Shown here one piece after another: positions 22,964 through 55,325 of a DNA stretch of 64,000 nucleotides. Made by a program: the position numbers and the translations under genes. The stretch spans positions 1-64,000 of the forward strand of contig NW_003314271.1 in assembly GCF_000143415.4 (NCBI RefSeq), given 5' to 3'. Positions within the stretch are counted from its first letter, which is position 1; every line of letters begins with the position of its first letter. Source of the stretch: Selaginella moellendorffii (Eukaryota; Plantae; Lycopodiophyta). The notes below the pieces were generated by a model. That model ran no database searches. It was not told the DNA's origin and worked only from the letters and a program-made list of their open reading frames with translations.

Positions 22964-23054
22964 AAAGGTGTGATTTTTCCCAAGCAAATGGCTTGTATAT
23001 CTATCAAGAAGAATGCAACAACGAGCTTACGATCGCGAACTCCTTGATCTTTTT

Positions 23055-26000
23055 TTACGCTGCCAGGCTCTTGGAGGCGATCTCAAACACATTCTCCGAC
23101 AGGCCATCGGTTTTAGCAATGCGTTCCAGTTGAGCCTACGAGGACAAAGTCACACACATTTGAGAAGAGAAGACCTGGAAAACAAACACTGCCTAACCTT
23201 AGCCAGCGATTGTCTGCCTTCATCAAAGCGTTTCCACCTCGACAATGACGATACCATTCGCGATGCCACCTGTGAGGACGAAGTTAAGATACGAAGAAAG
23301 TGTGCTTGCGAGTTACCTGAGGGTTCATTTTGTCCAACTGCAAAGTCACCTCTGCCAAAAACTCGTAGCCAGAGCCATCTTTAGCGTGAAAGTTGACAGC
23401 GGTTCGACAGAAAGGACCGATCAGAGAATACACCTGTGTAGCAAGGATGTTTTAGCTCCTGAGAAAGGTGATCTGAAACACAGAACCTTGTTTGGGTTCT
23501 TCATGTCGAAGGACGGATGATCTAGCAATCGCCTCATGTTCTTAACATTTCCAGGGATATCAGACATAGATTGTAACACCAGCCATTTGTTCACAACCTG
23601 CATGTTTTTGCTCAGTCTCCATGAAAAAAGAAGCAAAGGAAATTCTTACCAAAGTTTCGTCCTTCCACTGCTCGTAGAAGTTTGCCAAAGCTTCATCACG
23701 CACGTCCCCAGGATTCTGGCAAAGTGAAGAGAGGGCTGCAAATTGATCTGTCATGTTTGTTGCGCTTTTGTATTCGTTCAAAGCAAGCTCAGTAGTGTCC
23801 GCCTCGTCCAGAGAGCAGAGGTAGCCTGCAAATCACGCACTCAAGTCTAAGAGAACTATCAAGGAAGCGACTCACCGAGAGCGAGGTTTTTTAAGGATCT
23901 CCTGGCTTTGTTTTTGTGATCGAATGTGTAGTGCGGATCAGAACTTCGGTTTTCAGTCACCTGCATCAGAAAACGGATGTCATGGCAGAAACAAACACGA
24001 TAAGTCTATACTCACAGTTTTCAGGAAATCTTGCTTCAGTTTCGACGCAAGCTCTCTTATCACGAATTTTCGGACAGTATGTACTGCATCTGGATCTGCA
24101 ACCTCCATCAAGTCCATCAGTTCGCTTTCTCCAGGAAGTGTTAGTGCCTTTGCCACAAATTCCTGTAATATGTCCGTCAGCTAGAGCCTAGAAGCATGAG
24201 AAAAACATGCCTTATCTAACGAGGAATCGTTGAGAATACTGCGCATGCCTTCCACAAATGCGGATGGAACCGCGAGCTGTTCGTTTCTTTGTGCTTTCGG
24301 AATAAGATCCAGCATAAGTTTTCTTCCCATCGTCTGTCCAGCCTCCCATCTGTTAAACTCGTCGGAGTCATGCGCGAGCAAAAAGAGCAAATCGTCATCC
24401 GTCACAGTCGGTGTCACAAGGCGCACGGGAGCACTAAAGTTTCTTAGGAAAGATGGCACAGGTTTCTCAGGCAAATTGAGAAAAGTGAACTCTTGCTCTT
24501 CCTGCAAAAGTACACTGGTTAGAACACCAAAACCAAACAAGATGCACCCTCACCTTATCAACAAGAAGTACTGCTGTCTTTGCAGGTCCCCCCGCTGTGT
24601 CTTTCAATGACTTGAGTGATCCTCCATCAAGCAACTCGGTCAACACCATATCTTCGCCTTTTGAATTTAGTAGACCCACAGCCAATGGTATTAACGTCGG
24701 CTCCTTCACAGGTTGTCCAGGTGTAGAAGGAATTTCTTGCCTAAGGAGAAAACGCAGGAGAAATAAAGAATAGAAAGGCCACCTCTTACTTGCACTTTAC
24801 AGTATAGCTACGAGCTGCAGCATCATACGCTGTCGAAACAGTAAGAATGGGTGTTCCAGCTTGAGAATACCTGTAAGAACATGGTCAGGCAGGTGAACAC
24901 TCGTGCATTAGCTTACCATCTCAAGAAAACTGAAAGATTGGCGGAATTAGCGTCTCGCATAGCAGCAAAGAAATCCTCGCAAGTTACAGCTTGTCCGTCG
25001 TGACGTTCAAAGTACAAGTCCATGCCCTGTGCAACACCGTCTGCAAAGATATAAGAATACTGAACACAAACCTTCCGAAACCCATCTTTCCCAAGCAATG
25101 TTTGGTACATGCGAACGACTTCCGCACCCTTTTCATACACCTGTAGACATAGACGTAGAATTAAGACGCCTAACAATATCGTTTTCGAACTTCTTACCGT
25201 CACTACGTAAATAGTAAGGACAGATAACAAAATGTCAGTCGCGGCAAAACTACAATTCTAAAGCTCATACCCGTATAGAAGTTGTCCATCTGCAAATAAG
25301 CTCTTTTTTAGTAAGAGTTTTTGCAAATGAGGAGTACCTTAATGTAAGAATGCGGACGGACAGGGTGCGCCATGGGACCAGCGTCCTATTGCGGACAAGA
25401 AGGTCAGTGTGATTTGAAGAGAAAGAAGAAGAAAAAAACCTCTGGTACCTCTGAGAATTGTGCTGTTCTGAGAAGAGCGACATCACCGATACGTTTGACA
25501 GGTCGAGAGCCCATGTCAGAAGAAAACTCCTGTAACTTGGCATTTCAGTACACAAAGAAACCAACGCAAAAACTATACGCACCTGATCCCTGAAAACTGT
25601 AAGACCCTCCTTCAGACTCAATTGAAACCAATCACGGCATGTCACCCTGTATTACATGACTATATCAGCTAAAGCAGTGACAATGCGACGACGTACCTAT
25701 TCCCAGTCCAATTGTGGAAGTACTGCAAAGCAAACGTAGAGGTTAGTGGTTGTAGAACCTCTAATTCAGACCAACCTCATGACCAATCACACCCAAAATT
25801 GCCGCGTAGTCAACATCTGTAGCAGTTTCAGCAGACGCCAGAACAAGTTTCGAGTTGAATATCTGATACGAATAGAAAAATTAAGTGAATACAACAGCAA
25901 AAAAGACACACATTCAAGCTCTTGTTCTCCATAGCACCCCTACACCGTGCATCAGTTACCAAAAACGAACAAAAACAACGGCATCTTACATGTTGAAATC

Positions 26001-27584
26001 GGGAACAGCGACAATGTTAAACAGGTCAAGATCATACTCCAACCCATACACCTGTGCGAAGTTGAGATAAAAGAGAGAGAGAGAGAAAAGACTTCTACTT
26101 ACATCCTCATCCCACTTCATTGAAAGCTTGAGAGCATGCATAGCATGCTCTGTCTTTGGAACGTCTTGTGCAGGAGTCCAAATCCTCAGTTGAACATCCC
26201 TTCCTGAACGCGTTTTAAAAGTATCGTCTCTGGACGTGAGTTGCCCCGCTACCAAGGCAAAGAGGTAGCAAGGCTTTTTGAAAGGATCCTCCCACACAGC
26301 ATAATGAAATCCATTCTGACCACAGCACGTCGGGCTCTACACAATGCCAGTGAAGAAACAATGCCAACCTCGAGGTCTCCGGAGTCTATAAGGTTGCCAT
26401 TCGACAAAAGAACGGGATACTGTGCTTTGTCCGCTTCTATCCTGGTAGTGAACTTTGCCATAACGTCTGGCCGATCCTGTAATAGCTCGCCAGAATGTCA
26501 GCCAAACATTGTCACAAAAAAAGACCTGGTAAAAGGTTATCTTTCTAAAACCTTCAGCTTCGCATTGTGTACAAAACATGCCGCTGGAAGACTTGTAGAG
26601 CCCCTGTTGGAAAAAAAAAAGTAACCATTCTAAAAAACTTGATCCCACTTACTTCGAGAGACAAGTTAGTCTCCGGGTGTATCTCAGAGCCAATCTCTAA
26701 ATCAAAAGGCTGAACAGGAAGTGACTTCAACGTCAGATGACGGCTGGTCAGCTCAACTTCTTCCAGCTTCCGTTCTTCGCCGTTGATTTTAACAAAGAGA
26801 AGTTTCACGTCACGACCATCCAAAACCAATGGCGGGCTTTCACCTGCATGGCTTCTGGTTAATGACTACCAAGATAGCGGACGAAACAACGAAAGTGAAA
26901 AAGAAAATACTTGAGTTTCTCGGCAAAACCCGGATCTTAGACACCACGGTTGTCTTTTTCTCAGACAGAACAAATTTCAGCTCGACCTGGGTGGAAAAAA
27001 CGAAATCAGCATCCAAAATCCACACGGTGCGTTACCGTGTCAAAGTGATAGCCAGTGGGCTTGTAATCCTTCAAAAAAATCTCCTTGGGAGCCTCCTTGA
27101 CAGCCATCTCTTCAGCTACAGGAGAAGCTCCAACACTCGCTGTGGAGAATTGGCTAGACCCTGCAAAAGCACGCTACAGTTCACGACATGTGTTAGTCCG
27201 TAAGCTTCACGAAAATGAAAGAAAAAAAAAGTACCGGCAATTTCAATCGGCTTCCGCGCACGCAACCAAGTTCCTACATTTTTTGTTCGAAGATGAGAAC
27301 CATAAACAATGCTTGAAACATCTACCTTGAATTTCGAAGACAAGGCAAACGTGGAACTGGATTTACAGTACCGAGTGAAGCTCCTTGCCTGCAAAAGCAA
27401 GTAGCAAATTTAGAGGAAGTAAAATTGACATGAAAAGGAAGAACCGAGAGAGAACAAAAAGAAGAATCTGAAGCAAGAAGAAATAAAGCACCGGGAAAGC
27501 TCTGGTGGCTAATGACAGTCGCGAGGAGACGGCCAAGACGAAACTAAGCCCTGGTCTCTGGCAAGGCGCCATGACGGTGGCCAT
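23055..27584 (-). CDS. M1 aminopeptidase N (PepN-type, puromycin-sensitive), copy 1, apparently intact with N-terminal transit peptide
   Basis: Many short exons: [56 protein letters not shown]|[14 protein letters not shown]|YFHNWTGNR|[42 protein letters not shown]|[16 protein letters not shown]. Homologous to Arabidopsis MPA1-type enzymes. Confidence 0.9.
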
Positions 27585-30867: not shown

Positions 30868-32718
30868 AGGTTGTTTTCTGACTTCATTCAACATAACATT
30901 CCCCTGGTTGCACAAATGATACATAATATTGCTTTCTATTTTGCTCAAGAAAAGAAAGATAACAAGGAAAAAATGAAAAAAAAAAAAGAATTAATGTACC
31001 TCTTGTTTGAAAATGAGCTTCTAGCAAAGCAGATGGCTTCATGCATAATAAAGCTGGGAAAAGAGCTAAAAACAAAACAAATAGCCCAAACAACACTGAG
31101 GCTAGCATAGGAGATAAGCACATGATAAAAGATTAGGAGAAACAACATAATCTACACCCACTAGTCTCCTACTTTTTGTTGGGCACTTACAAACCACCTA
31201 AATAAAAGAAAGTTGAGAGTATGGAGTAGGTAGGAGCGTGGAGGAGCATAAAAGAAGGGAGTAAGAGTAGTCCAAATCAAACTTGCAAAAATTTTGCTAT
31301 ACTTTTTAACAGATATCTAGACTACCAAAACAAAATAAACAAGATATGAAGAATGTTTGTGCTTTGGTTGGCCCAACTATGTAAATAGTTAATAACAAAT
31401 GAATCCATGCTACCAAAAGGTTCATCTAGTTAGGTGTTCTTCCAAATAAACTTCCAAGAGAAGTGTATTCAATTAAATTAAAGAAATACATAAAAGGAAA
31501 AAAGAATCTAAGAAAATCTAGCAATTTAATAATCATATGTGTTGAGATTGTAGATAGCATAATTAGATTCAATGATGTTGAGTAAGTTATTGTATGCTTG
31601 TCATTGATTTTAATTTGCCAATTAAACTCACACACAATATATATTATGAAAGGATATTATGGATCAAACATATTCATAAGCTTGTGGTTGATATAGTTTT
31701 ATGAATCTATATTGTATAACACAAGAATGTAGTCATAGCAATGCTCAAATACTTATGATTGATGATTATCAAAGTTTGTTGTTGAGATAGGAGTGCTAGA
31801 AACATTAGCCACTTCTCCTTGTGAAAATCTAAGTCATTTGGCTAAATGTTGTTCTAAATAAACTTTAAAAAGAAATGCATTCAATTAAATCAAAGAAATA
31901 TGTAAAAGGAAAAGAGAATCTAAAGGAAATCCAACAATTTAATAACCATATGTGTTGGGATTATGGATAACATAGTTAAATTCAATGATGTTGAGTAAGT
32001 TGTTGTATGTTTGTTGTTGATTTTTGATTTTCTAATTAAATTCATACACAATATATATTGTAAAAAGATATTATGGATCAAATATATTCATCAGCTTGTG
32101 GTTGACAAAATTTTATGGATCTACATCATATAACACAATAACATGATCATAATGATGCTCAAATGCTCATAATTGATGATCACCAAAGTTTGCCATCGGG
32201 ATAGGAGTATTAGCCACTTCTCTTTGCCAAAATACATGTTAATTGTTATCAGAAAGGTTTTAGAACATAGCTCTGTGGCATACCTATAAATTCAAATAAA
32301 CCAAGTGCAATATTTTATCCCCAATAGTTCACATAATTTGCAATTCTCCTTGCTTTACACACAACCATGAATATATAAATAAATATAGAGAAGATGTATA
32401 ATTAATTTAACCTTCCATTTGCACAAAGACAATTATTTACTACTAATGGGGTTGGATCGTTATTATTGTCTTTCAAAAGTGTCTTGAAAATTAAATGAAC
32501 CATTTCTATACTTTACCATTGTTTATATCAATATTTATATAAAAAGTGAAAATGGGGTTAGTTTATTTTTAACATAAAATGTTACATAGAACTGTTATAC
32601 CTCCCTAATTGTATTTCTATGGTGGAGTGGATGGAGAAATAAATGAAGCAATCACTTTTAGTATATATTATGTTTTGTAACTTTGTCTTAAATATTTTTT
32701 ATTTGATTTGATTATAGA

Positions 32719-32803
<85 letters not shown>

Positions 32804-35700
32804 CATATGTAAAACTGACCAACTTACAAAATATATTTCACATGGATGCCAATTATTTCATTTGTGATACAAATAAAACAATAATTATAACCCAACAATC
32901 ATAAAAGTAATAATTTCTTTTGATTTACTTTTAATAACTTATCTTAATCCCTCTTTTAATAATTTAAAGTCAATGTAGATGAGACTAAATTATGCCTTGA
33001 AAGCTATTCAAAGTATCCATGAATGTTAGCTCTATCCTTGAAAGATTTCAAGAGAAAAATGTTTAATTATAAATTTTCAATCTAGAATTGATGTGAGTTG
33101 TATTATGCAACAATTAAGATAGTGTAAGATTTGCAAGATCATCAATTCTTTGAAAAATACCACTAACATGACAAAAATAATAGTTGAAAAAAAATTATTT
33201 GAAAGCACAACCTTTAGATTTTCATAATGTTTGACAACACTTTGTACATTTCCTAAGGAACACCATGTGGAGTATACTTACAAATCAAAAAATAAAATTA
33301 AAGTACTTTAGAAAAATCTTATACTCATAGCTTGATTAGAACTCCATCTTTATCAACTATGAATTATTTGAGGAAAGAAATAAACAATTGGAAAGTAAAA
33401 CAAAATGAATTGGAGATTCTTTAAATTGCATCAATATCTTTAATCGAATTTAAAAATAACTTATAATACATGAAGATTCCGTTTTGTTTTTTTTTTTTTG
33501 CAACAACACAATGTGTAGTTGGTAGTTTTTCCTATATACTTCAGCGGTAAGTCATGAGAAAGCAAAAAGCCCTCAGGCACATTATCGGGTTGTTTCTTGA
33601 CTTCATTCAACATGCCATTCCCTTGTTTGTGTGAATGATATATGAAGTTGCTTTCTATTTTGCTCAAGAAAAAAAAGATAACATGGAAAAAAGGGCAAAG
33701 AATAAAGAATCAATATACCTCTCATTTAAAGATGAGCTCTTAGCAAACCAAATGGCTTTATGCTTAATAGAGCTGAGAAAATAACTATAGGTAAAACAAA
33801 CAGTCTAAATGACACTAAAACTAATGTGGGAGACAAGCACATGACAAAAGATCAGGAGAAACAACACAATTTACACTACTAATCTCATACTTTCTGTTGT
33901 GCACCTATAAACCACCCAAAGAAAGTTGAGAGTATAGAGTAGGTGGGAGTTTAGAAGAGCCTAAAAAGAGAGAACAAGAGTAATCTAAACCAATTTTGCA
34001 AAAGTTTGCCTATACTTCTTGACAGATAGTTAGACTGCTAAAACAAAATAAACAAAATATAATGAATGTTTGGTGCTTTGGTTAGCTCAACTATATAAGT
34101 AGTTAACAACAAATGAATCCATACTAGCAAATGTTTATTTAGCTAGGTGTCGTTGTAAATAAACTTTTTTTAAAAATGCATTCAATTAAATTAAAGAAAT
34201 ATATAAAAGGAAAAGAGAATTTAAAGGAAATCCAACAATTTAATAACCATATGTGTTGGGATTGTGGATGACATAATTAAATTTAATGATGTTGAGTAAA
34301 TTGTTGTATGCTTCTTATTGATTTTCAATTTGCTACTTAAACTCACACACAACATATATTGTGAATGAATATTGTGAATCAAATATATTTACGAACTTAT
34401 GGTTGCCAAAAGTTTATGGATCTACATCACATAACACAAAAATGTGATTATAGTGATGCTCAAATGCTTATGATTGATGATCACCAAAGTTTGTTGTTGA
34501 GATGGGAGTATTAGCCATTTCTCCTTGCCAAAATACAAGTCGATTATTATTTGGACAATATTATCGGAAAGATTTTAGAATATAGCTCCGTGGCATGCAC
34601 ATAAATTTAAATAAACCAAGTGCATTATTTTATCCCTAATAGTTCATATAATTTGCAATTCTCTTTGCTCTCCACAACCATGAATATAAATAAATATAAA
34701 GAAAATGTATAATTAATTTAACCTTCCATTTGCACAAAAACAATTGTTTGCTACTAATGAGGTTGGATCATTATTGTTGTCTTCCAAAAGCATCTTGAAA
34801 ATTAAATGAGCCATTTCTATACTTTACCATTGTTTGTGTCAATCTTTATATAAAACGTGAAAATGGGGTTAGGTTATTTTTGATATAAAATTTTATATAA
34901 AATTGTCGTACTTCCTTAGTTGTATTTCCATGGTAGAGTGGATGGGGAAATAAATAAAGCAATCACTCTTAGTGCATATTATGCTTTGTAACTTTGTCTT
35001 AAATGTTTTTTAATTGATTTGATTATTATTAAGATAAATGTACATGTATATATGTAAGACATATGTAAGACTGACCACCTTGAAAAATATATTTCACATG
35101 CATGCCAACTGTTTCATTTGTGATACAAATAAAGCAATGATTATAGCCTAGCAATCATAAAAGCAATAATCTCTTTTGACTTACTTTTAATAACTTATTT
35201 TAATCCCTCTTTTAATAATTTGAAGTCAATGTAGATGAAACTAAATTATGCCTTGAAAGCCATTCAAAGTATCCATGAATGTTAGCTCCATCCTTGAAAG
35301 ATTTTAAGAGAAAAATGTTTGATTATAAATTTTCAATCTAGAATTGATGTGAGTTGTATTATGCAATAGTTAAGATAATGTAAGATTTGCAAGATCATCC
35401 ATTCTTTAAAAAATACCACTAGCATGACAAAAACAATGGTTGGATAAAAATTTATAAAACTCTAATAGCACAACTTTTAGATTTCCATAATGTTTGAGAA
35501 CACTTTGTACATTCTCTAAAGAATAATACATAGCTATGTGGAGTATGCTTACAAATCAAAAATAAGATAAAAAAACTTTAGAGAAATCTTATATTTGTGG
35601 CTCAATTGAAACTCCATGTTTGTCATCCAGATCATTCAAGGAGAGAAATAAACAATTGGAAAGAAAAACAAAATGGATTAAAGATTCTTTAAATTGCATT
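30868..35700 (-). repeat. Tandemly duplicated AT-rich ~2.1-2.6 kb unit (30868-33430 and 33587-35700), possibly a decayed LINE; extra internal duplication at about 31400-32225
   Basis: Long collinear identity between the units; weak AIxFARxxxF motif like a non-LTR retroelement C-terminus; no long ORF. Confidence 0.6.
32724..32798. repeat. (TA)n microsatellite
   Basis: About 37 TA units; the paralogous site near 35045 is unexpanded. Confidence 0.95.
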
Positions 35701-36170
35701 AGTCAAGTTTGAAAATGGCTCATAATACACTAAGATTCCTTGCAACAACACAATGTGTAGTAAATAACTTATAAATTCAAGAAGAGAAAGTACAAATATG
35801 GTAACTTTTCCTGTATACTTAAGCAGTAGAGCCATGAGGAAACAAGAGGTTGTGAGCCATGGTGTAAGCTGAGTTGCCTTCTGTACAATTTCCATAAGGC
35901 GCTGAGCATCGCCCAGGTGCAAATTGGCCTAGCTGAGTGACAACTTGTGGCTAGTTCAAGGTTGTCCAGTACTTCACATGGTCACCGAAAGTCTTGAAAC
36001 AAAACTCTGGCAAAATTTGTAAAGTCTTTCCTGAAAAGAAAAGAAAACTAGCTTATCCTATTTATTCATAAAATACAGCATACACCTCGATTGCCTGTGG
36101 CAAGTCATAGTGATTGAGATTGGAATAAGGCTGGATCCCTTTCAGGAGCATGTAATCTATAACACTACTC
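35697..36170 (-). pseudogene. Glycoside hydrolase family 1 (beta-glucosidase) internal fragment
   Basis: IDYMLLKGIQPYSNLNHYDLPQAIE|...CFKTFGDHVKYWTTLN*PQ...FAPGRCSAPYGNCTEGNS...YTMAHNLL...H...GILVYYEP; the catalytic NEP glutamate codon is a stop. Confidence 0.8.
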
Positions 36171-37496: not shown

Positions 37497-37792
37497 TTTA
37501 TCACAAGGTATTCTTTATTGTGTTTATTTTTTTTCTTTTGTTGCAGTAAACATGAAGCCTTTCGTGGCTATTATAAATTTAAGGTAGTAAAGAAAGCATT
37601 TTTGATAAATAATATATAGGAGTCTCGATGCTGTAATCGCTTTAAAGTTAGCTCGCTTTGAGAGCCTGTGTTGCCTTTTTCCCATTGGCTATCACCTCGG
37701 TTTTGCCTCGTCTTGCTAAAATTAGCGTTGGCTCCGGGAACATGAACCGCCGTAGAACTCTTGGGATGGAATTGAGGAGCTCATCACTTGCA

Positions 37793-39177
37793 TTCTTCTA
37801 TTTCGCAGCCTTTGCCATGTGAAGGATTGGACAACCTTTAACTCAGCTCAGGTATGACAATGGCACACCATGGAAACTCATCTTGAATTGAAACTCAAAA
37901 GTTCCTTAAGACTAAAGGCAAACAATTGCTGGATCTCAAGCTCAGGATTGCCTTGGTAAACTTGGTTTTGAGAAAAAATTAATGCTTTCTGAGATCAAGT
38001 CATAGTTTAAGCATTAACATCAATGCTTTATTAAGATTAACTTGCTAGAGTTTGTTCTTTTGCAAGAGGTAAAATGGAAGTCTTAAAAAACTGTGTTGGA
38101 CTTCCATTGACTTCCGTTGACTTTGAGCTCTCAGGTCAGTTGGTGCATGTTCCCGAGTTTTCTTTTCTTTTTTTTTTTGTGAGACTCCTTTGATTTTGCT
38201 GCAGTGGTAAAAAACTGTCAGGTAGTGTGGTAGGCCATAATTGTTTATGTTTGAGGGATTTGCAAAAGCTTCCCACAATATTTGTTTCTCAAGGATATTA
38301 TCTATCTATCGTTTATAATCTTGTGGTGCCCAACCTGGAAGCACATGAAAAATGAATGCAAGTGTTTGTGAAATTTGCTAATACGAAAGAACAAGGATTT
38401 ACTTTGGCATTGATCAAATTTGCGAGAATAGTTCTTGGATGCTGCCCTTCTAGACGTCACCCACACATATCTGCGAGAAAGAGCTTCCACTGTTCTAAGA
38501 GAATCATCATCTGATCAGCAAGACATTTACCTCCACGATTTTCTCTGAGGCTTCCGGGACCAGGATCACTTCCACGAAAACTTCCGCGACCTGATCCACG
38601 AGCCACAAGACCTTTTAGATGCATGCTTTCCTGCTAGAGTTTCTTACCTTATTTTGACAATTATGGTTAATCACTAGGACTTATACTTACCTTCTCTTAT
38701 TTTCAATCTAGAGGCATATCTCTTATTAAATGGATATCTAAAGTCTCACAAGAAAGTATTTCATTTGTTCAATCATCAAGGGAAAAACCATAAGTTCCAA
38801 TGATGACCCAACATCAAAAAGCATGTAAGATGTTTAGTTAGTAAGACAATAAATTTTACTAGAAAATAATTCAAAGTAGTAGTTAATGCCGTCCGCAGGC
38901 AAGGATCCTTATCGGCACTGGGCAAGATTAGCTCAAATTTGTTGTCATCCCAGACAATATGAGGCGATCAAGAACACGAATCCCTCTAAACGCCCCATCC
39001 AAATCGCACTAGAAAATTCGGCCCAGCTCTCTAATTGCAAGTAGCTGGATAAAGAACGATATAATTTCCTCTCTTTAGTTAGCTAGTGTCTCTCTTGGTG
39101 AAAAGCTTAAAAGCCAAATGCCGGCCTGAGCTGAGGTTGACCAAGCCACGATAAGTCGAACACTTGGACTTTCTTAA
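37793..39177. repeat. Composite duplicated block (GH1 trace, 3' end of the Rossmann-fold gene, unknown segments)
   Basis: Near-identical to 62624-64000; parts recur at 48100-48950 and inverted at 55530-56300. Confidence 0.85.
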
Positions 39178-39277
39178 GTCACTAGGAAAGACAATAGCAC
39201 GTCAGAAACGCCCTCCTTATCACATTTGATCCATTCTTCTCCTGAAACGACCTCCTTATCACATCCAGAACCCTGAG

Positions 39278-40120
39278 AAAAGGCTGAACAGGAAGTGACT
39301 TCAGCATCAGATGACGGCTGGTGAGCGCAACTTCTTCCAGCTTCCGTTCTTCGTAGTTGATTTTAACAAAGAGAAGTTTCACGTCACGACCATCCAACAC
39401 CAATGGCGGGCTTTCACCTGCATGGCTTCTGGTTAATGACTACCAAGATAGCGAACGAAACAACGAAAGTGAAAAAGAAAATACTTAAGTTTCTCGGCAA
39501 AACCCGGATCTTAAACACCACGGTTGTCTTTTTCTCAGACAGAACAAATTTCAGCTCGACCTGGATAGAAGGTGGAAAAAACGAAATCAGCATCCAATTA
39601 GTACGGTGCGTTACCGTGTCAAAGTGATAGCCAGTGGCCTTCAAAAAGATCTCCTTGGGCGCCTCTTTGACAGCCATCTCTTCAGCTACAGGAGAAGCTC
39701 CAACACTCACTGTGGAGAATTGGCTAGACCCTGCAAAAGCACGCTACAGTTCGACATGCCTTAGTCCGTAAGCTTCGCGAAAATGGAAAAAAAAAAAACG
39801 TACCGGCAATTTCAATCGGCTTCCGCGCACGCAACCAAGTTCCTACATTTTTTGTTCGAAGATGAGAACCAAAAACAATGCTTGAAACGAATTTCGAAGA
39901 CAAGGCAAACGTGGAACTTACCGAGTGAAGCTCCTTGCCTGCAAAAGAGAGTAGCAAATTCAGAGGAAGTAAATTGACATGAAAAGGAAGAACCGAGAGA
40001 GAACAAAAAAATCAGAAGCAAGAAGAAATAAAGCACCGGGAAAGCTCTGGTGGCTAATGACAGTCGCGAGGAGACGGCCAAGACGAAACTAAGCCCTGGT
40101 CTCTGGTGACGGTGGCCATT
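39278..40120 (-). pseudogene. 5' fragment of the aminopeptidase N gene (promoter region continues to about 40290)
   Basis: Matches 26705-27584 with deletions: [30 protein letters not shown]...LPVQPF, then breaks off. Confidence 0.88.
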
Positions 40121-40410
40121 TTCTCCTCTTAAACCCCTAAAATCCAAAGACACAACACAGGCAGCTCCATTCTTTTAGAATCTTTACTGCTCGAGATCAT
40201 CAAAGCACGAATGCGCTGCGCACAAAATTGCGAAAAACCTGTCGAGCAAATATTATCGCGCGCTCCTCTTTTCGGTCAACACGCCACTGAGGTGATTAAA
40301 AGTTACTAAGGACTAAAAGTTACTAAGAAAAGTTACTAAGCATTTAAAATTTACTACTAAGGATCGATCACCTCATTGATAAGACGATTTGCATTCAAGA
40401 AGAGATGGGA

Positions 40411-41134
40411 TTATTTGGGATTATCGATCCACAGCTCATGGGCAAGCTTGACAATCTCCTCCCCGGCCTTGCAAGGAGAGCCAGCATCGTATGGCGGCTG
40501 CGGATCATACTCGATCATCAGCTGCACCGCTTTGGCAATCTTCTCATTCGTGATGATCGAGGCCAAGTAGATGGCCATGTCGATCCCTGAAGAAACTCCT
40601 GCAGCGGTCACGATCTTTCCCTGCTTGATGTACCTCTGGCTCGTCACCTTGGCACCATATTCCTTAAGCTGCGGATACGCGGCCCAGTGTGTCGTGGCTT
40701 TCACGCCCTTGAGCAATCCCGCTGCGCCGAGGATCAGAGCTCCAGTGCACACTGAAGTGGTGAATGTTGTGCATTCGTGAGCCTGGAAGATCGACACAAG
40801 AACAAGCAGGGCTGGATCGATCGAAATGGATGAAGAAACGAGCAATTACCTTGCGGATGTAGTCGAGGAGTGGCTTGTGATCTAACGGCAGGAGCTTGGG
40901 AGTGCCTCCTGGAACTAGCAGAATGTCAGGATTGGGCAGATCTTCAAAGCTGGCGCTTGCTTCAATCTTGAATCTGCCTTCGTCTGCAACAACGAGGCCC
41001 AGCTTGTCGCTCACGAAGGTAACGCTCACTCCCGGGAGGCGATGGAGCGCTTCATACGGCCCAATTGCATCCAACACAGTGATGTTGTTGAAGATTGGAA
41101 TGGCTACCTGGATTTTCGATCCCATTGGCTTCAT
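40411..41134 (-). CDS. DJ-1/PfpI family protein of the bacterial isocyanide hydratase (InhA/ICH)-like clade, 218 aa, one intron (40783-40849)
   Basis: ITVLDAIGPYE, DILLVPGG, TSVCTGALILGAAGLL, KATTHW, VTAAGVSSGIDM, AVQLMIEYDPQPPYDAGSP; exons 40850-41134 and 40411-40782 splice in frame. Confidence 0.9.
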
Positions 41135-41449
41135 GCTCAGTGTTGCTGATTCTTGAGCTGCTGAGATGGGTATTTATCCACTGCTCAAGCTGAACCAGGG
41201 GCCCATGTGTTGCACGTGTTTTCGTTCATAACCAAGTTGTAAGCAACACAATAACAGCTGTTATTCCAATTGTCAACATGAAATAGTTATATGCAAAATC
41301 AAAGTGGCAATTTGTATATTTTATAAAATGAAAATGACATGTACAAAAATCAAGTCTATTACAATGATTTTTAATCATATTTACTTTTATATAAGTAAAA
41401 GACAACATTAATATTAATTAATTTTAAACACTGACTAGTTTAGTCCTGA

Positions 41450-48714: not shown

Positions 48715-50500
48715 TCAAATTCGCGAGAATAGTTCTTGGATGCTGCCCTTCTGGACGTCACCCGCGCATATCTGCGAGAAAGAGCTTCCACTGTTCTAAG
48801 AGAATCCTCGTCTGATCAGCAAGACATTTACCTCCACGATTTTCTCTGAGGCTTCCGGGACCACGATCGCTTCCACGCAAACTTCAGCGACCTGATCCAC
48901 GAGCCGCAAGACCTTTTAGATGCATGCTGTCCTGCTAGAGTTTCTTACCTTTGATCGACTGATACCACCTATGAAGAGCGAGTCGGCTGGCGTCATGACG
49001 AGAGCCTCATCCTGGAACAAAAAGAAACGTTATCTCTAAGAAACTTAGGAGAGAATAGCAACGTTTACAGCGGGTGCGTTCTCTCGTAGACCAGCAGGCC
49101 TTACGATAGTGTACTCAAGCCCCGAGCGTTGCAAAGCTCTGCCTGCCTTTTCCTGAGGAAGGATAAAACGAGTGAGACAACATTCTTGCGAAGTTAAAGC
49201 TTGTTTCGCTTACCACCACAGAATGGGGATTATCTGGAGGAATGACGAGAATCGACGTAACCAGTATAAACTGCGAGTTAAATGTCAGTCTGGATAGACA
49301 ATACTTTCCTTGCTACCTTTTTCACTTGTCCTTGGTTCTTGGCTGCCGAGATAAGGTTCACAACTCCTTCATACTCGATCTGGAAAAAAATCACTCAGTG
49401 TCAAAGAGAATGTGATTAACAACTTAAGAACCTGGTAAGTCTTCATAATATCCAGCGGCAAAAACTTCGTCCCAATGACACACACGACCGCATTACTGTA
49501 AAGCTTGCTTTAGACTGGAAGATGAGAAAGAGCCAAACGTACCTATCACCCAGTGCTTACTTGAGAGTTTCGTATTTACAAATGTCGCCACGGACAGCCT
49601 GCTTGTCCAGAAAGAAGACACGTTACCAGAAAACGCAGTGACACCAGCAGCACAAATTTCAACTTACAGTCACGTTGCCCTGCTCGTTGAATCGATTGGC
49701 CTTATCACTTTGGCACCTCCTTTCGAGAGCTTTTCCACCACGAGCCTGAGTTTAGAGAATCAAAACTTGGTTACAAAGGCAAAAACGAAAGAAAAAAGCA
49801 AGAACGGAAAAACGAACTCACGAACCTTCCAGTTCTTCCCGAGGCACCGGCCACGAAAACCTTGAGATCAGCAAACCGCCCTTGATCGTGCCGAGGTTGC
49901 TCCTTTGGTTCCGTGCCATCTTGATCGTGCCGGGGCTGCTCCTTTGATTTCTTACCATCTTGATCGTGCCGGGGATGCTCCTTTGATTTTGTGCCTTTAG
50001 ACGAATCCACGGGAGTGCTGCCAGAAACTTCTTTCGAGACTGCCTCAGCCCCAGCTTCTACGTTCTCTCTCAAATCTCCTCCCAAAGAAGAGATGCCCTC
50101 GAGCCGATCTCTCTCTTCTGACTCTTCCACTCCATCGTCAGCTTCGTTCTCCTCTCTCAAATTACCTGGCAAAGAAGAAACGGCCTCGGGCTCTTCCGAC
50201 TCCTCAACTCCATCCTCGCCATCATCCGACGCAGCATCCTCGTCGGAGATTTCTTCATCCAGCGCATTATCGAGCAAAGATTTCTCTTGCCGATCTTCCT
50301 CAGCCACGTTGGGAGTCGAGCTATCCAGGATGTGAGGCTGCCGGACGAGCTCTTCCTCCACCGGATACGCTTATTCAGGAGCTTCATATGCCCTGCACAG
50401 ACCGATGCGATCAACAACAGCCAAGACGCAAGAACAAGAGAAGAAAATTTCCACTCACGAGCTCGCCGATGCTTCGTCCGCGCCACAATCTTCTGCATAT
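48715..50500 (-). pseudogene. NAD(P)-binding Rossmann-fold (TIC62-like atypical SDR) gene with acidic repetitive N-terminus, frameshifted
   Basis: KVFVAGASGRTG, IEYEGVVNLISAAK, FILVTS, LQRSGLEYTIVRPAGL, GGISRSK, VAEVCVEAI...KIVE, ICAGDVQKGSIQELFSRI*; small deletions break several exons; 5' end abuts a PPR 3' fragment. Confidence 0.78.
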
Positions 50501-50504
50501 CGCG

Positions 50505-50758
50505 CTTGGTGGTGGTGGTCTTGTTGATCAAAGGCCGGGAGTGCCGGTATGTGTTCGTCCCGGGATGGAGGACGGATATCTTGAGCCGGGCGGACGAGAT
50601 GAGTGAAGCTTGCGAGGACGATGTCTAGACGAAGCGGTGGTGATTTCTCCGTTGGCGTGGCACCAGCGGCTTGTAGAAAGTGGAAGAATTGAGGTGGCTT
50701 TTGAGGAGCTGGGTGGTGAAGCTGTATACAATCTTATGGCAAATGCTTGCTCGACCTG
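50505..50758 (+). pseudogene. PPR pseudogene 3' fragment (another at 59137-59385)
   Basis: Matches 22705-22963, including that copy's deletions. Confidence 0.85.
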
Positions 50759-50849
50759 AAAAGGTGTGATTTTTCCCAAGCAAATAGCTTGTATATCTAT
50801 CAAGAAGAATGCAACAACGAGCTTACGATCGCGAACTCCTTGATCTTTC

Positions 50850-53800
50850 TTACGCTGCCAGGCTCTTGGAGGCGATCTCAAACACATTCTCTGACAGGCC
50901 ATCGGTTTTAGCAATGCGTTCCAGTTGAGCCTACAAGGACAAAGTCACACACATTTGAGAAGAGAAGACCTGGAAAACAAACACTGCTTAACCTTAGCCA
51001 GCGATTGTCTGCCTTCATCAAAGCGTTTCCACCTCGACAATGACGATACCATTCGCGATGCCATCTGTGAGGACGAAGTTAAGATACGAAGAAACTGTGC
51101 TTGAGTTACCTGAGGATTCATTTTGTCCAACTGCAAAGTCACCTCTGCCAAAAACTCGTAGCCAGAGCCATCTTTAGCGTGAAAGTTGACAGCGGTCCGA
51201 CAGAAAGGACCGATCAGAGAATACACCTGTGTAGCAAGGGATGTTTTAGCTCCTGAGAAAGGTGATCTGAAACACGGAACCTTGTTTGGGTTCTTCATAT
51301 CGAAGGACGGATGATCTAGCAATCGCCTCATGTTCTTAACATTTCCAGGGATATCAGACATAGATTGTAACACCAGCCATTTGTTCACAACCTGCATGGT
51401 TTTGCTCAGTCTCCATGAAAAGAGAAGCAAAGGAAATTCTTACCAAAGTTTCGTCCTTCCACTGCTCGTAGAAGTTTGCCAAAGCTTCATCACGCACGTC
51501 CCCAGGATTCTGGCAAAGTGAAGAGAGGGCTGCAAATTGATCTGTCATATTTGTTGCGCTTTTGTATTCGTTCAAAGCAAGCTCAGTAGTGTCCGCCTCG
51601 TCCAGAGAGCAGAGGTAGTCTGCAAATCACGCACTCAACTCTAAGAGAACAACTATCAAGGAAGCGACTCACCGAGAGCGAGGTTTTTTAAGGATCTCCT
51701 GGCTTTGTTTTTGTGATCGAATGTGTAGTGCGGATCAGAACTTCGGTTTTCAGTCACCTGCATCAGAAAACGGATGTCATGGCAGAAACAAACACGATAA
51801 GTCTATACTCACAGTTTTCAGGAAATCTTGCTTCAGTTTCGACGCAAGCTCTCTTATCACGAATTTTCGGACAGTATGTACTGCATCTGGATCTGCAACC
51901 TCCATCAAGTCCATCAGTTCGCTTTCTCCAGGAAGTGTTAGTGCCTTTGCCACAAATTCCTGTAATATGTCCGTCAGCTAGAGCCTAGAAGCATGAGAAA
52001 AACATGCCTTATCTAACGAGGAATCGTTGAGAATACTGCGCATGCCTTCCACAAATGCGGATGGAACCGCGAGCTGTTCGTTTCTTTGTGCTTTCGGAAT
52101 AAGATCCAGCATAAGTTTTCTTCCCATCGTCTGTCCAGCCTCCCATCTGTTAAACTCGTCGGAGTCATGCGCGAGCAAAAAGAGCAAATCGTCATCCGTC
52201 ACAGTCGGCGTCACAAGGCGCACGGGAGCACTAAAGTTTCTTAGGAAAGATGGCACAGGTTTCTCAGGCAAATTGAGAAAAGTGAACTCTTGCTCTTCCT
52301 GGAAAAGTACACTGGTTAGAACACCAAAACCAAACAAGATGCACCCTCACCTTATCAACAACAACTACTGCTGTCTTTGCAGGTCCCCCCGCTGTGTCTT
52401 TCAATGACTTGAGTGATCCTCCATCAAGCAACTCGGTCAACACCATATCCTCGCCTTTTGAATTTAGCAGACCCACAGCCAATGGTATTAACGTCGGCTC
52501 CTTCACAGGTTGCCCAGGTGTAGAAGGAATTTCTTGCCTAAGGAGAAAATGCAGGAGAAATAAAGAATAGAAAGGCCACCTCTTACTTGCACTTTACAGT
52601 ATAGCTACGAGCTGCAGCATCATACGCTGTCGAAACAGTAAGAACGGGTGTTCCAGCTTGAGAATACCTGTAAGAACATGGTCAGGCAGGTGAACACTTG
52701 TGCATTAGCTTACCATCTCAAGAAAACTGAAAGATTGGCGGAATTAGCGTCTCGCATAGCAGCAAAGAAATCCTCGCAAGTTACAGCTTGTCCGTCGTGA
52801 CGTTCAAAGTACAAGTCCATGCCCTGTGCAACACCGTCTGCAAAGATATAAGAATACTGAACACAAACCTTCCGAAACCCATCTTTCCCAAGCAATGTTT
52901 GGTACATGCGAACCACTTCCGCACCCTTTTTATACACCTGTAGACATAGACGTAGAATTAAGACGCCTAACAATATCGTTTTCGAACTTCTTACCGTCAC
53001 TACGTAAATAGTAAGGACAGATAACAAAATGTCAGTCGCGGCAAAACTACAATTCTAAAGCTCATACCCGTATAGAAGTTGTCCATCTGCAAATAAGCTC
53101 TTTTTTAGTAAGAGTTTTTGCAAATGAGGAGTACCTTAATGTAAGAATGCGGACGGACAGGGTGCGCCATGGGACCAGCGTCCTATTGCGGACAACAAGG
53201 TCAGTGTGATTTGAGGAGAAAGAAGAAAAAAACCTCTGGTACCTCTGAGAATTGTGCTGTTCTGAGAAGAGCGACATCACCGATACGTTTGACAGGTCGA
53301 GAGCCCATGTCAGAAGAAAACTCCTGTAACTTGGCATTTCAGTACACAAAGAAACCAACGCAAAAACTATACGCACCTGATCCCTGAAAACTGTAAGACC
53401 CTCCTTCAGACTCAATTGAAACCAATCACGGCATGTCACCCTGTATTACATGACTATATCAGCTAAAGCAGTGACAATGCGACGACGTACCTATTCCCAG
53501 TCCAATTGTGGAAGTACTGCAAAGCAAACGTAGAGGTTAGCGGTTGTAGAACCTCTAATTCAGACCAACCTCATGACCGATCACACGCAAAATTGTCGCG
53601 TAGTCAACATCTGTAGCAGTTTCAGCAGACGCCAAAACAAGGTTCGAGTTGAATATCTGATACGAATAGAAAAATTAAGTGAATACAACAGCAAAAAAGA
53701 GACTCACATTCAAGCTCTTGTTCTCCATAGCACCCCTACACCGTGCATCAGTTACCAAAAACGAACAAAAACAGCATCTTACGTGTCGAAATCGGGAACA

Positions 53801-55325
53801 GCGACAATGTTAAACAGGTCAAGATCATACTCCAACCCATACACCTGTGCGAAGTTGAGATAAAAGAGACAGAGAGAGAAAAAAGACTTCTACTTACATC
53901 CTCATCCCACTTCATTGAAAGCTTGAGAGCATGCATAGCATGCTCTGTCTTTGGAACGTCTTGTGCAGGAGTCCAAATCCTCAGTTGAACATCCCTTCCT
54001 GAACGCGTTTTAAAAGTATCGTCTCTGGACGTGAGTTGCCCCGCTACCAAGGCAAAGAGGTAGCAAGGCTTTTTGAAAGGATCCTCCCACACAGCATAAT
54101 GAAATCCATTCTGACCACAGCACGTCAGGCTCTACACAATGCCAGTGAAGAAACAATGCCAACCTCGAGGTCGCCGGAGTCTATAAGGTTGCCATTCGAC
54201 AAAAGAACGGGACACTGTGCTTTGTCCGCTTCTATCCTGGTAGTGAACTTTGCCATAACGTCTGGCCGATCCTGTAATAGCTCGCCAGAATGTCAGCCAA
54301 ACATTGTCACAAAAAAAGACCTGATAAAAGGTTATTTTTCTAAAACCTTCAGCTTCGCATTGTGTACAAAACATGCCGCTGGAAGACTTGTAGAGCCCCT
54401 GTTGGAGAAAAAAAAAATAACCATACTAAAAAACTTGATCCCACTTACTTCGAGAGACAAGTTAGTCTCCGGGTGTATCTCAGAGCCAATCTCTAAATCA
54501 AAAGGCTGAACAGGAAGTGACTTCAACGTCAGATGACGGCTGGTCAGCTCAACTTCTTCCAGCTTCCGTTCTTCGCCGTTGATTTTAACAAAGAGAAGTT
54601 TCACGTCGCGACCATCCAAAACCAATGGCGGGCTTTCACCTGCATGGCTTCTGGTTAATGACTACCAAGATAGCGAACGAAACAACGAAAGTGGAAAAAG
54701 AAAATACTTGAGTTTCTCGGCAAAACCCGGATCTTAGACACCACGGTTGTCTTTTTCTCAGACAGAACAAATTTCAGCTCGACCTGGGTGGAAAAAACGA
54801 AATCAGCATCCAAAATCCACACGGTGCGTTACCGTGTCAAAGTGATAGCCAGTGGGCTTGTAATCCTTCAAAAAAATCTCCTTGGGAGCCTCCTTGACAG
54901 CCATCTCTTCAGCTACAGGAGAAACACTCGCTGTGGAGAATTGGCTAGACCCTGCAAAAGCACGCTACAGTTCACGACATGTGTTAGTCCGTAAGATTCA
55001 CGAAAATGAAAGAAAAAACAAGTACCGGCAATTTCAATCAGCTTCCGCGCACGCAACCAAGTTCCTACATGATGAGAACCATAAACAATGCTTGAAACAT
55101 CTACCTTGAATTTCGAAGACAAGGCAAACGCGGAACTGGATTTACAGTACCGAGTGAAGCACCTTGCCTGCAAAAGCACGTAGCAAATTAGAGGAAGTAA
55201 AATTGACATGAAAAGGAAGAACCGAGAGAGAACAAAAAGAAGAATCTGAAGCAAGAGGAAATAAAGCACCGGGAAAGCTCGAAACTAAGCCCTGGTCTCT
55301 GGCAAGGCGCCACGACGGTGGCCAT
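50850..55325 (-). CDS. M1 aminopeptidase N, copy 2: catalytic region open, transit-peptide exon frameshifted (possible internal start at 54904)
   Basis: Collinear with copy 1; GAMEN and HEYFH retained; 37-nt deletion in exon 1; substitutions VYEKG>VYKKG and DFNM>DFDT. Confidence 0.7.

What the first reader, a model, noticed from the sequence alone, without database searches (positions are those of the whole stretch)
40411..41134. Bacterial-type isocyanide hydratase-like gene with an intron: candidate horizontal transfer into a plant
Seen: an intact single-domain 218-aa DJ-1/PfpI protein with LDAIGP, SVCTG, AAGVSSGID and QLMIEYDPQPPYDAGSP, one 67-nt intron, flanked by plant genes. Established: the Asp in LDxxGP, the Cys in SVCTG and the C-terminal EYxPxPPF/YxAGSP extension define the InhA/ICH clade, unlike the usual plant tandem-domain DJ-1 proteins that have Glu at that site. 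Inference: it resembles actinobacterial sequences as I recall them, so it may be a domesticated transfer that detoxifies microbial isocyanides or other electrophiles.
Basis: partly seen in the sequence, partly recalled or inferred. Interest (0 to 1): 0.78.

Follow-up and report, generated by a model that had tools for sequence, protein, structure and literature searches.

The report
Ancient bacterial-type isocyanide hydratase gene in spikemoss
This is an intact, transcribed spikemoss (Selaginella moellendorffii) gene for a bacterial-type isocyanide-hydratase-like enzyme; mosses, liverworts and clubmosses carry the same gene with the same introns, so any transfer from bacteria was very old and not specific to this plant.

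Summary
On the minus strand, 41134-40411, two exons (95 and 123 codons) are split by a 67-nt GT..AG phase-0 intron. It is identical to NCBI XP_024528909.1 (LOC9631145, "uncharacterized") of S. moellendorffii scaffold GL377575.1. Contigs from three studies skip exactly this intron.

The closest solved structure is Pseudomonas fluorescens isocyanide hydratase (ICH). The Cys101, Asp17 and Thr102 equivalents and the C-terminal EYDPQPP extension are all kept.

- **Not Selaginella-specific:** homologues occur in liverworts, mosses and lycophytes. They form one clade (UFBoot 99 / SH-aLRT 95).
- **Shared introns:** all eight genes examined share the intron position found here. Six also share a second intron, which the window gene and its copy 25 kb away have lost.
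- **Vertical descent:** the gene therefore descends from a common ancestor of bryophytes and vascular plants.
- **Bacterial origin:** the nearest relatives are mostly Actinomycetota. One ancient transfer is the best reading, but nesting inside the bacteria is not significant (AU p = 0.12).
- **Gaps:** no fern, seed-plant, hornwort or algal member was seen, and this absence is weakly tested. Enzyme activity is inferred.

The scan noted the neighbouring paralogue (s1-433278) and a trihelix fusion (s1-398770) elsewhere in this genome.

The parts
40850..41134 (-). Exon 1 (95 codons, start ATG at 41134). N-terminal half of the DJ-1/PfpI domain, with the LDAIGP motif whose Asp22 aligns with ICH Asp17.
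   Evidence: PF01965 positions 2-72, 28.5 bits; ICH 3NON family, E 1.2e-8, Asp aligned.
40783..40849 (-). Spliceosomal intron, 67 nt, gt..ag, phase 0, between Lys95 and Ala96 (..IRK|AHE..).
   Evidence: sequence; contigs of 3 runs in 3 studies skip exactly 67 nt; same position and phase in Diphasiastrum, Calypogeia, Marchantia, Sphagnum, Ceratodon and two other Selaginella genes.
40411..40782 (-). Exon 2 (123 codons plus TAA at 40413-40411). Carries the nucleophile elbow SVCTG (Cys107 = ICH Cys101, Thr108 = Thr102), AAGVSSGID (Ala156 and Val158 at ICH Gly150 and Ile152) and the C-terminal EYDPQPPYDAGSP extension.
   Evidence: PF01965 positions 96-160, 47.6 bits; ICH E 1e-28, aligned over 112 residues; site conservation.
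40380..41167 (-). Approximate extent covered by spliced transcript contigs, including short 5' and 3' UTRs. Contigs cannot fix the true ends.
   Evidence: table 8: records 9, 10, 11, 12 and X1 record 8.
37791..41329 (.). Duplicated block, 94.8% identical to scaffold positions 62625-66159. It carries this gene plus the start of an M1 aminopeptidase gene. The other copy holds paralogue LOC9631597 at 65247-65970, just outside the window.
   Evidence: blastn of L001 against the window; gene calls in L001.

Best explanation
The locus is LOC9631145 of Selaginella moellendorffii. It is one of at least four loci in this genome that encode a single-domain, ICH-type DJ-1/PfpI enzyme.

Shown:
- The gene is intact, spliced and transcribed.
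- It has the ICH fold and the ICH catalytic set: the Cys107 nucleophile, the Asp22 general acid, Thr108 and the C-terminal EYDPQPP extension.
- It belongs to one clade of liverwort, moss and lycophyte genes that share two intron positions. It was therefore inherited vertically from an ancestor older than the bryophyte-vascular plant split. The window copy and its 25-kb neighbour later lost intron 2 and arose by a local segmental duplication.

Inferred:
- The clade began with a single ancient transfer from a bacterium, most likely an Actinomycetota-like one, into the stem of land plants or earlier. It may have been lost in ferns and seed plants, for which no member was found.
- No N-terminal extension precedes the domain, so the protein is probably cytosolic.
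- It hydrates isocyanides (R-NC) to N-formamides by the ICH mechanism. Asp22 protonates the isocyanide carbon, the Cys107 thiolate attacks to give a thioimidate, and water releases the formamide. This would detoxify isonitrile metabolites of soil bacteria and fungi.
For: - Gene model and identity.
- Splicing: (67-nt skip in 3 studies).
- ICH kinship: (PfICH is the best PDB sequence match, E 1e-28 and 1e-8). AF2 model pLDDT 93.5, and the top 17 Foldseek matches are all PfICH (TM 0.81, E 1e-22).
- Catalytic residues. Asp is 28/28 and Cys 27/28 in the plant clade, and both are 50/50 in the bacterial ingroup. Roles of Cys101, Asp17 and Ile152 are taken from PMC12570138.
- Plant distribution: (Calypogeia, Riccia, two Marchantia species, two Sphagnum species, Ceratodon, Diphasiastrum, Selaginella). 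Genomic context is eukaryotic.
- Single plant clade: 99/95 in the careful tree, SH-aLRT 95-97 in the quick trees.
- Shared introns.
- Bacterial neighbours are mostly Actinomycetota. The plant clade lies inside that radiation in the ML tree, 27.6 lnL better than outside it.
- Composition: CDS GC is 0.53-0.55 against a median of 0.71 in the bacterial homologues, as expected for an old resident.
Against: - Nesting within the bacterial subfamily is only moderately supported (87-88 UFBoot). The AU test does not reject plants lying outside it (p 0.123), so donor and direction are not proven.
- Absence from ferns, seed plants, hornworts and algae rests on the named rows among the 120 best of a word-based search. 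Divergent members could be hidden; Selaginella P0317 itself scored among the bacteria.
- No member of the plant clade or its actinobacterial sister group has been assayed, as far as I could find. They are only 37-39% identical to PfICH over the structural alignment.
- The Gly150 and Ile152 positions read Ala and Val here.
- The Ma et al. 2022 catalogue of land-plant HGT was not available, so prior description cannot be excluded.
Confidence: 0.7

Rival explanations
1. Recent horizontal transfer from an actinobacterium into the Selaginella lineage only, followed by gain of an intron.
For: Exon 2 is 65-71% identical to the best actinobacterial and metagenomic proteins, but only 61% identical to the Calypogeia protein.
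Against: All plant genes form one clade at 99/95. The intron lies at the same codon boundary and phase in liverworts, mosses and Diphasiastrum, and a second shared intron is present in the divergent Selaginella paralogue P0197. CDS GC is far from the bacterial values.
Confidence: 0.03
2. No transfer at the base of land plants. The gene is older in the green or eukaryotic lineage, or entered streptophyte algae earlier. It survives only in bryophytes and lycophytes after many losses.
For: The AU test does not reject plants branching outside the bacterial ingroup (p 0.123). Absence from algae and hornworts was not tested exhaustively.
Against: No algal, fungal or other eukaryotic protein was named among the 120 best hits of three searches, while thousands of bacterial ones were found. 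The one cyanobacterial homologue fetched (Nostoc) falls in the distant outgroup, so there is no plastid signal. The ML tree nests plants among Actinomycetota.
Confidence: 0.15
3. The enzyme fold and catalytic dyad are ICH-like, but the physiological substrate in plants is not an isocyanide. It could be another electrophile, a glyoxalase III or deglycase-type reaction, or a regulatory or sensor role.
For: Activities in the DJ-1 superfamily are hard to predict from sequence. NCBIfam gives only sub-threshold hits to FtrA and GbdR regulator amidase-like domains and to DJ-1 glyoxalase III. The plant clade is about 38% identical to the assayed PfICH. Another note of this scan reports a Selaginella paralogue fused to a trihelix regulator (s1-398770; not tested here).
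Against: Asp, not the Glu of DJ-1 and glyoxalase III, sits at the acid position in all 82 sequences. The Cys-Thr elbow and the EYxPxPP extension that mark ICH are near-invariant. All top structural matches are ICH.
Confidence: 0.3
4. Bacterial contamination or an assembly artefact in the Selaginella assembly.
For: None beyond the bacterial-type sequence.
Against: The gene has a spliceosomal intron. It lies about 40 kb into a 3.09-Mb scaffold between multi-exon plant genes. Spliced transcripts occur in independent studies. There are allelic and paralogous copies on other scaffolds and orthologues in chromosome-scale assemblies of six other plant genera.
Confidence: 0.01

Closest known systems
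Pseudomonas fluorescens isocyanide hydratase (ICH; PDB 3NON and many mutants) and P. putida InhA, EC 4.2.1.103
   Same: It has a single DJ-1/PfpI domain of about 220 aa. The SVCTG elbow is identical, with the nucleophilic Cys followed by Thr. Asp stands at the general-acid position. The C-terminal helix and EYxPxPPF/Y..GSP extension are present. PfICH is the best sequence and structure match.
   Different: Identity is only 37-39% over the structural alignment. The gene belongs to a separate, Actinomycetota-dominated subfamily, split 100/100 from the proteobacterial and cyanobacterial ICH-type outgroup. Ala and Val replace Gly150 and Ile152. The gene is eukaryotic, with an intron. Activity is not assayed.
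Marchantia polymorpha proteins annotated 'cyclohexyl-isocyanide hydratase' (P0135, P0242) and unnamed orthologues in Riccia, Calypogeia, Sphagnum, Ceratodon and Diphasiastrum
   Same: They lie in the same plant clade and share intron 1, and all examined outside the window pair share intron 2. Their catalytic residues are the same, except in P0242.
   Different: The window gene has lost intron 2 and has very short introns, as is typical of Selaginella. It is one of a recently duplicated pair. P0242 has Gly in place of the catalytic Cys.
Canonical plant DJ-1 / glyoxalase III proteins (AtDJ-1A-F; e.g. PDB 4OFW, AtDJ-1D)
   Same: They belong to the same superfamily and fold (PF01965).
   Different: Those are tandem two-domain proteins with Glu at the acid position and no EYDPQPP extension. 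The match to the window protein is weak (E 1.5e-5 for exon 2). PMC3160306 and PMC8170915 describe that family; PMC8170915 mentions neither Selaginella nor Marchantia nor isocyanide.
Gene families acquired by early land plants from bacteria (e.g. Yue et al. 2012, PMC3493653; DNA-3-methyladenine glycosylase, PMC5570899)
   Same: The pattern is the same: a plant clade closest to bacterial sequences, later gain of introns, and presence in early-diverging land plants.
   Different: This family is not in the main text or tables of Yue et al. 2012. It appears to be missing from seed plants, whereas many such families persist there.

Membership tests
DJ-1/PfpI superfamily (Pfam PF01965) | Sequence match above the Pfam gathering score | tested here: met
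   exon 1 scores 28.5 bits and exon 2 scores 47.6 bits (cut-off 26.6), on complementary parts of the profile.
DJ-1/PfpI superfamily (Pfam PF01965) | Flavodoxin-like alpha/beta fold with a nucleophile elbow | tested here: met
   AF2 model pLDDT 93.5. There are 227 PDB matches at E<=0.001, and all 50 listed are DJ-1/PfpI/ICH-type proteins.
Isocyanide hydratase (ICH/InhA type, EC 4.2.1.103) | Nucleophilic Cys (PfICH Cys101) followed by Thr102 in the elbow | tested here: met
   the alignment shows SVCTG identical in query and PfICH. Cys is 27/28 and Thr/Ser 28/28 in the plant clade.
Isocyanide hydratase (ICH/InhA type, EC 4.2.1.103) | Asp (PfICH Asp17), not Glu, as the acid next to the Cys | tested here: met
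   LDAIGP aligns with LDLTGP. Asp is present in all 82 sequences. The role of Asp17 is taken from PMC12570138.
Isocyanide hydratase (ICH/InhA type, EC 4.2.1.103) | C-terminal extension EYxPxPPF/Y..GSP beyond the core DJ-1 domain | tested here: met
   aligned without gaps to PfICH residues up to 209. E186, Y187, P189 and P191 are invariant.
Isocyanide hydratase (ICH/InhA type, EC 4.2.1.103) | Gly150 / Ile152 loop that gates helix motion in PfICH | tested here: inconclusive
   Ala and Val stand at these positions in the plants and in all ingroup bacteria. In the outgroup, Val is in 4 of 4 and Ala in 2 of 4. PfICH G150A has a solved structure (6NI5). The effect on activity was not looked up here.
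Isocyanide hydratase (ICH/InhA type, EC 4.2.1.103) | Catalytic conversion of isocyanides to N-formamides | not testable with these tools
   Needs recombinant protein and a p-nitrophenyl or cyclohexyl isocyanide assay.
Canonical plant DJ-1 / glyoxalase III | Tandem duplication of the DJ-1 domain with Glu at the acid position | tested here: not met
   The protein has a single 218-aa domain with Asp22. The match to AtDJ-1D is only E 1.5e-5.
Recent, lineage-specific horizontally transferred gene | Restricted to one plant lineage and nested next to a specific donor group | tested here: not met
   orthologues with shared introns occur in liverworts, mosses and both lycophyte orders.
Ancient bacterium-to-land-plant transfer | Monophyletic plant clade nested within bacterial sequences, with no other eukaryotic homologues | tested here: inconclusive
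   Monophyly is supported at 99/95. Nesting has 87-88 UFBoot but is not significant by AU (p 0.123). Absence from algae and other eukaryotes rests only on the named top hits.

The most novel reading that the evidence does not exclude
The ancestor of land plants captured an actinobacterial isocyanide-detoxifying enzyme. Bryophytes and lycophytes have kept and repeatedly duplicated it: at least four loci in Selaginella and at least five gene models in Ceratodon. It would act as a chemical defence against isonitrile antibiotics and metal-scavengers made by soil microbes. Ferns and seed plants would have lost it.
Probability: 0.35. Interest if true: 0.55.

Novelty: new member of a known kind. Interest (0 to 1): 0.4.

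Why it matters
Isocyanide (isonitrile) natural products are common bacterial and fungal toxins and metal chelators. ICH is so far studied as a bacterial enzyme and as a model for enzyme dynamics. A conserved, expressed ICH-type gene family in liverworts, mosses and lycophytes would give non-seed plants a defined counter-measure to such compounds.

It would also add a dated case, before the bryophyte-tracheophyte split, to the list of bacterial genes taken up during the move onto land. It can be tested directly in Marchantia, which carries an orthologue.

For the scan itself, the result corrects a tempting reading. A bacterial-looking gene in one plant genome is not evidence of a recent transfer until the sister lineages have been checked.

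Tried and rejected
- **Contamination:** rejected on the intron, scaffold context, spliced contigs and orthologues.
- **Selaginella-specific transfer:** rejected by the tree and the intron map.
- **P0245:** this 436-aa metagenome protein scored above most plant proteins with the plant profile. I suspected a bacterial member of the plant clade or a donor. It is a bacterial gene call that fuses part of a GlxA-like regulator with an ICH-type gene, and its ICH part is 77% identical to a Rokuibacteriota sequence. The high score is the sum of two domains.
- **Conserved linkage with M1 aminopeptidase:** suggested by JGI's name 'aminopeptidase N' for P0150 and by the Selaginella neighbour. No such neighbour was seen at the Calypogeia, Marchantia, Sphagnum, Diphasiastrum or Ceratodon loci, so I dropped it.
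- **Literature:** eight full-text queries found no paper describing plant ICH-type genes or this transfer. Ma et al. 2022 (Mol Plant) is not held.
- **ESM Atlas:** feature search returned only Actinomycetota-dominated DJ-1/PfpI clusters.
- **Exhaustive search not run:** The search of protein representatives reads the same underlying proteins without names, and sensitivity was not the limiting factor here.
- **No joined model of my own:** the two exons were searched separately by reference. The full-length sequence used later is the database record P0123.

Full report
**What is there**

The minus strand of the window carries an ATG at 41134. An open frame runs to a gt at 40849, a 67-nt intron ends in ag at 40783, and a second open frame ends with TAA at 40413-40411. 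The exons translate to 95 and 123 residues.

Each exon alone passes the Pfam gathering score for DJ-1_PfpI. Exon 1 covers profile positions 2-72 and exon 2 covers 96-160. NCBIfam gives only sub-threshold hits.

The full-length sequence used later is the database record P0123, returned by a cluster look-up. A script confirmed that it is colinear with the two exons once the intron is removed.

**Where it comes from**

The word search with exon 2 returned a 100% match to a Selaginella moellendorffii protein. Fetching that locus showed that L001 11971-20724 equals window 64000-55247 at 100% identity. The window is therefore positions 1-64000 of scaffold GL377575.1, which is 3.09 Mb long.

The protein first found (P0001, LOC9631597) is not the window gene. 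It is a paralogue at 65247-65970, 25 kb away. The window gene is LOC9631145 (XP_024528909.1, P0123), which NCBI annotates as "uncharacterized protein".

The two copies lie in a 3.5-kb duplicated block that is 94.8% identical and also holds the start of an M1 aminopeptidase gene. Further copies sit on another scaffold (P0121, P0125, probably the second haplotype). Two divergent paralogues, P0197 and P0317, lie on other scaffolds.

Neighbouring genes are ordinary multi-exon plant genes. Contamination is excluded.

**Expression**

Contigs of three public runs from three studies, laid at >=98% likeness, skip exactly 40782-40848 (CT..AC on the plus strand, which is GT..AG on the gene strand). They cover about 40380-41167. 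The runs are only guessed to be RNA, but an exact intron skip is what spliced mRNA gives.

Some contigs carry G at 41001. This turns Leu45 into the Pro seen in P0121 and P0125, so allelic or near-identical copies are transcribed too. X1 and X9 carry the window's own base there.

**What kind of protein**

The best solved relatives of both exons are Pseudomonas fluorescens isocyanide hydratase entries: E 1e-28 for exon 2 and 1.2e-8 for exon 1. The next are two uncharacterised ThiJ/PfpI proteins. Arabidopsis DJ-1D reaches only E 1.5e-5.

In those alignments the Asp of LDAIGP falls on ICH Asp17, and the SVCTG elbow is identical to that of ICH (Cys101, Thr102). The C-terminal EYDPQPPY..GSP stretch aligns without gaps to EYAPAPPF..GSP.

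An AlphaFold2 model of P0123 is confident (mean pLDDT 93.5). Its 17 best Foldseek matches are all PfICH entries, with TM 0.81 and E about 1e-22. The large rmsd presumably reflects the placement of the C-terminal helix in a monomer model; I did not check this.

Cys101 is the nucleophile and Asp17 the probable general acid, with the Ile152 loop gating water entry, according to PMC12570138. Across 28 plant-clade sequences, 50 related bacterial sequences and 4 outgroup sequences, Asp is invariant. Cys is missing only in one Marchantia paralogue, and E186, Y187, P189 and P191 of the extension are invariant. The Gly150 and Ile152 positions read Ala and Val in plants and in all close bacterial relatives.

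By every sequence and structural criterion I could test, the protein is an ICH-type enzyme. Activity itself is inferred.

**Is it a transfer into this plant?**

No. A search with the liverwort hit, and then with a profile of plant sequences, found homologues in three groups:
- liverworts: Calypogeia fissa, Riccia fluitans, Marchantia polymorpha and M. paleacea;
- mosses: two Sphagnum species and five gene models in Ceratodon purpureus;
- lycophytes: three gene models in Diphasiastrum complanatum and several in Selaginella.

The Marchantia proteins are already labelled "cyclohexyl-isocyanide hydratase". These genes lie on chromosome-scale assemblies, and where neighbouring genes were called they are eukaryotic.

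I derived exon-intron structures for eight of them. All eight have a phase-0 intron at the same codon boundary..(R/Q)K | (A/V)H(E/D).., which is the position of the window's intron. Six also have a second phase-0 intron at ..Q/E | GK(I/V)..: Selaginella P0197, Diphasiastrum, Calypogeia, Marchantia, Sphagnum and Ceratodon. Only the window gene and its 25-kb paralogue lack it, so they lost it. Sphagnum has one extra intron.

Two shared intron positions across liverworts, mosses and both lycophyte orders are hard to explain except by common descent of an already intron-bearing gene.

**Phylogeny**

The tree used 82 sequences and 224 columns under LG+C20+F+G4, rooted on four proteobacterial and cyanobacterial ICH-type proteins taken from plasmid records. 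It puts all 18 named plant sequences, together with 10 unnamed metagenome or Logan sequences, in one clade. Support is UFBoot 99 and SH-aLRT 95; the quick trees gave 95-97. The bootstrap had not fully settled when the search ended, so these values are rough.

At least one of the unnamed sequences (P0249) is an intron-less, mRNA-like 1-kb contig. Inside the clade, liverworts, mosses, Diphasiastrum and Selaginella each group together.

The clade sits within a radiation of bacterial sequences that are mostly Actinomycetota: Acidimicrobiia, Thermoleophilia/Solirubrobacterales, Streptomycetaceae and Pseudonocardia.

That nesting has only 87-88% bootstrap. Forcing the bacteria together with plants outside costs 27.6 log-likelihood units, but the AU test does not reject it (p = 0.123). 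A bacterial, probably actinobacterial, origin is therefore the best reading and is not proven.

No fern, seed-plant, hornwort, algal or fungal protein was named among the 120 best hits of any search. Only a quarter of database proteins carry names, and only the best 120 rows are shown, so this absence is weak evidence. CDS GC (0.53-0.55) is far below the bacterial homologues (median 0.71), consistent with long residence.

**Local history**

Between the window gene and its neighbour, the differences are distributed very unevenly:

| Segment | Differences |
|---|---|
| Exon 1 | 13 (10 codons changed nonsynonymously, 3 synonymously) |
| Intron | 0 |
| Exon 2 | 2, both synonymous |

This suggests gene conversion over the 3' part, or relaxed or diversifying change in the N-terminal half. 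The numbers are too small to decide.

**Literature**

I found no paper describing ICH-type genes in plants or this transfer. It is not in the text or tables of Yue et al. 2012. The large catalogue of Ma et al. 2022 is not held, so prior listing cannot be excluded.

The scan itself has noted the neighbouring paralogue (s1-433278) and a trihelix-ICH fusion elsewhere in this genome (s1-398770). I did not test the latter.

**Verdict**

The family assignment (ICH-type, not plant DJ-1-type, with actinobacteria-like relatives) is supported.

The evolutionary reading needs correcting. This is a vertically inherited member of a bryophyte-plus-lycophyte gene family. Its bacterial origin, if real, predates the split of those lineages.

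It is a new, undescribed member of two known kinds of thing, ICH enzymes and ancient bacterial genes in land plants. It is of moderate interest, mainly because it is easy to test in Marchantia.

Noticed in passing
window 37791-41329 versus scaffold 62625-66159 (window 62625-64000 plus L001 9812-11970): A segmental duplication at 94.8% identity carries the ICH-like gene plus the 5' part of an M1 aminopeptidase gene. More aminopeptidase-derived repeats, 97-98% identical to L001 13347-17023, lie at window 22707-26726 and 50324-54522.
   Followed up: partly
window 40850-41134 versus L001 10001-10285: The two neighbouring paralogues differ at 13 nt in exon 1 (10 nonsynonymous codons), 0 nt in the intron and 2 synonymous nt in exon 2. 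This may reflect gene conversion of the 3' part or relaxed or diversifying change in the N-terminal half.
   Followed up: partly
window 41001: Transcript contigs of two runs read G instead of A, which changes Leu45 to Pro. That matches the copies on the other scaffold (P0121, P0125). Two other runs carry the window's base.
   Followed up: partly
P0242 (Marchantia polymorpha, second paralogue): Gly replaces the catalytic Cys (SVGSG) and the branch is long. It is probably a catalytically dead paralogue, although it is annotated as cyclohexyl-isocyanide hydratase.
   Followed up: no
P0146 (Ceratodon purpureus M758_7G146300): It carries an N-terminal extension of about 35 residues with a hydrophobic stretch ahead of the domain. 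This may be a signal or targeting peptide that the other family members lack.
   Followed up: no
L092 4911-6221 (JGI metagenome contig, P0245): In a bacterial contig the ICH-type gene directly follows, and is called as fused to, the remnant of a GlxA/AraC-type regulator with its own DJ-1-like domain. P0254 and P0265 carry AraC-type HTH Pfam domains (PF12833), and P0255 is of similar length without one on record.
   Followed up: partly
L083 5179-6350 and 8001-9085 (Marchantia polymorpha): Two ICH-type genes lie in tandem about 1.6 kb apart. Diphasiastrum P0130 and P0132 also carry adjacent locus tags, so tandem duplication recurs in this family.
   Followed up: no
window 31001-36000: This is a strongly AT-rich stretch (GC 0.24-0.31) in a window that averages 0.44.
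   Followed up: no
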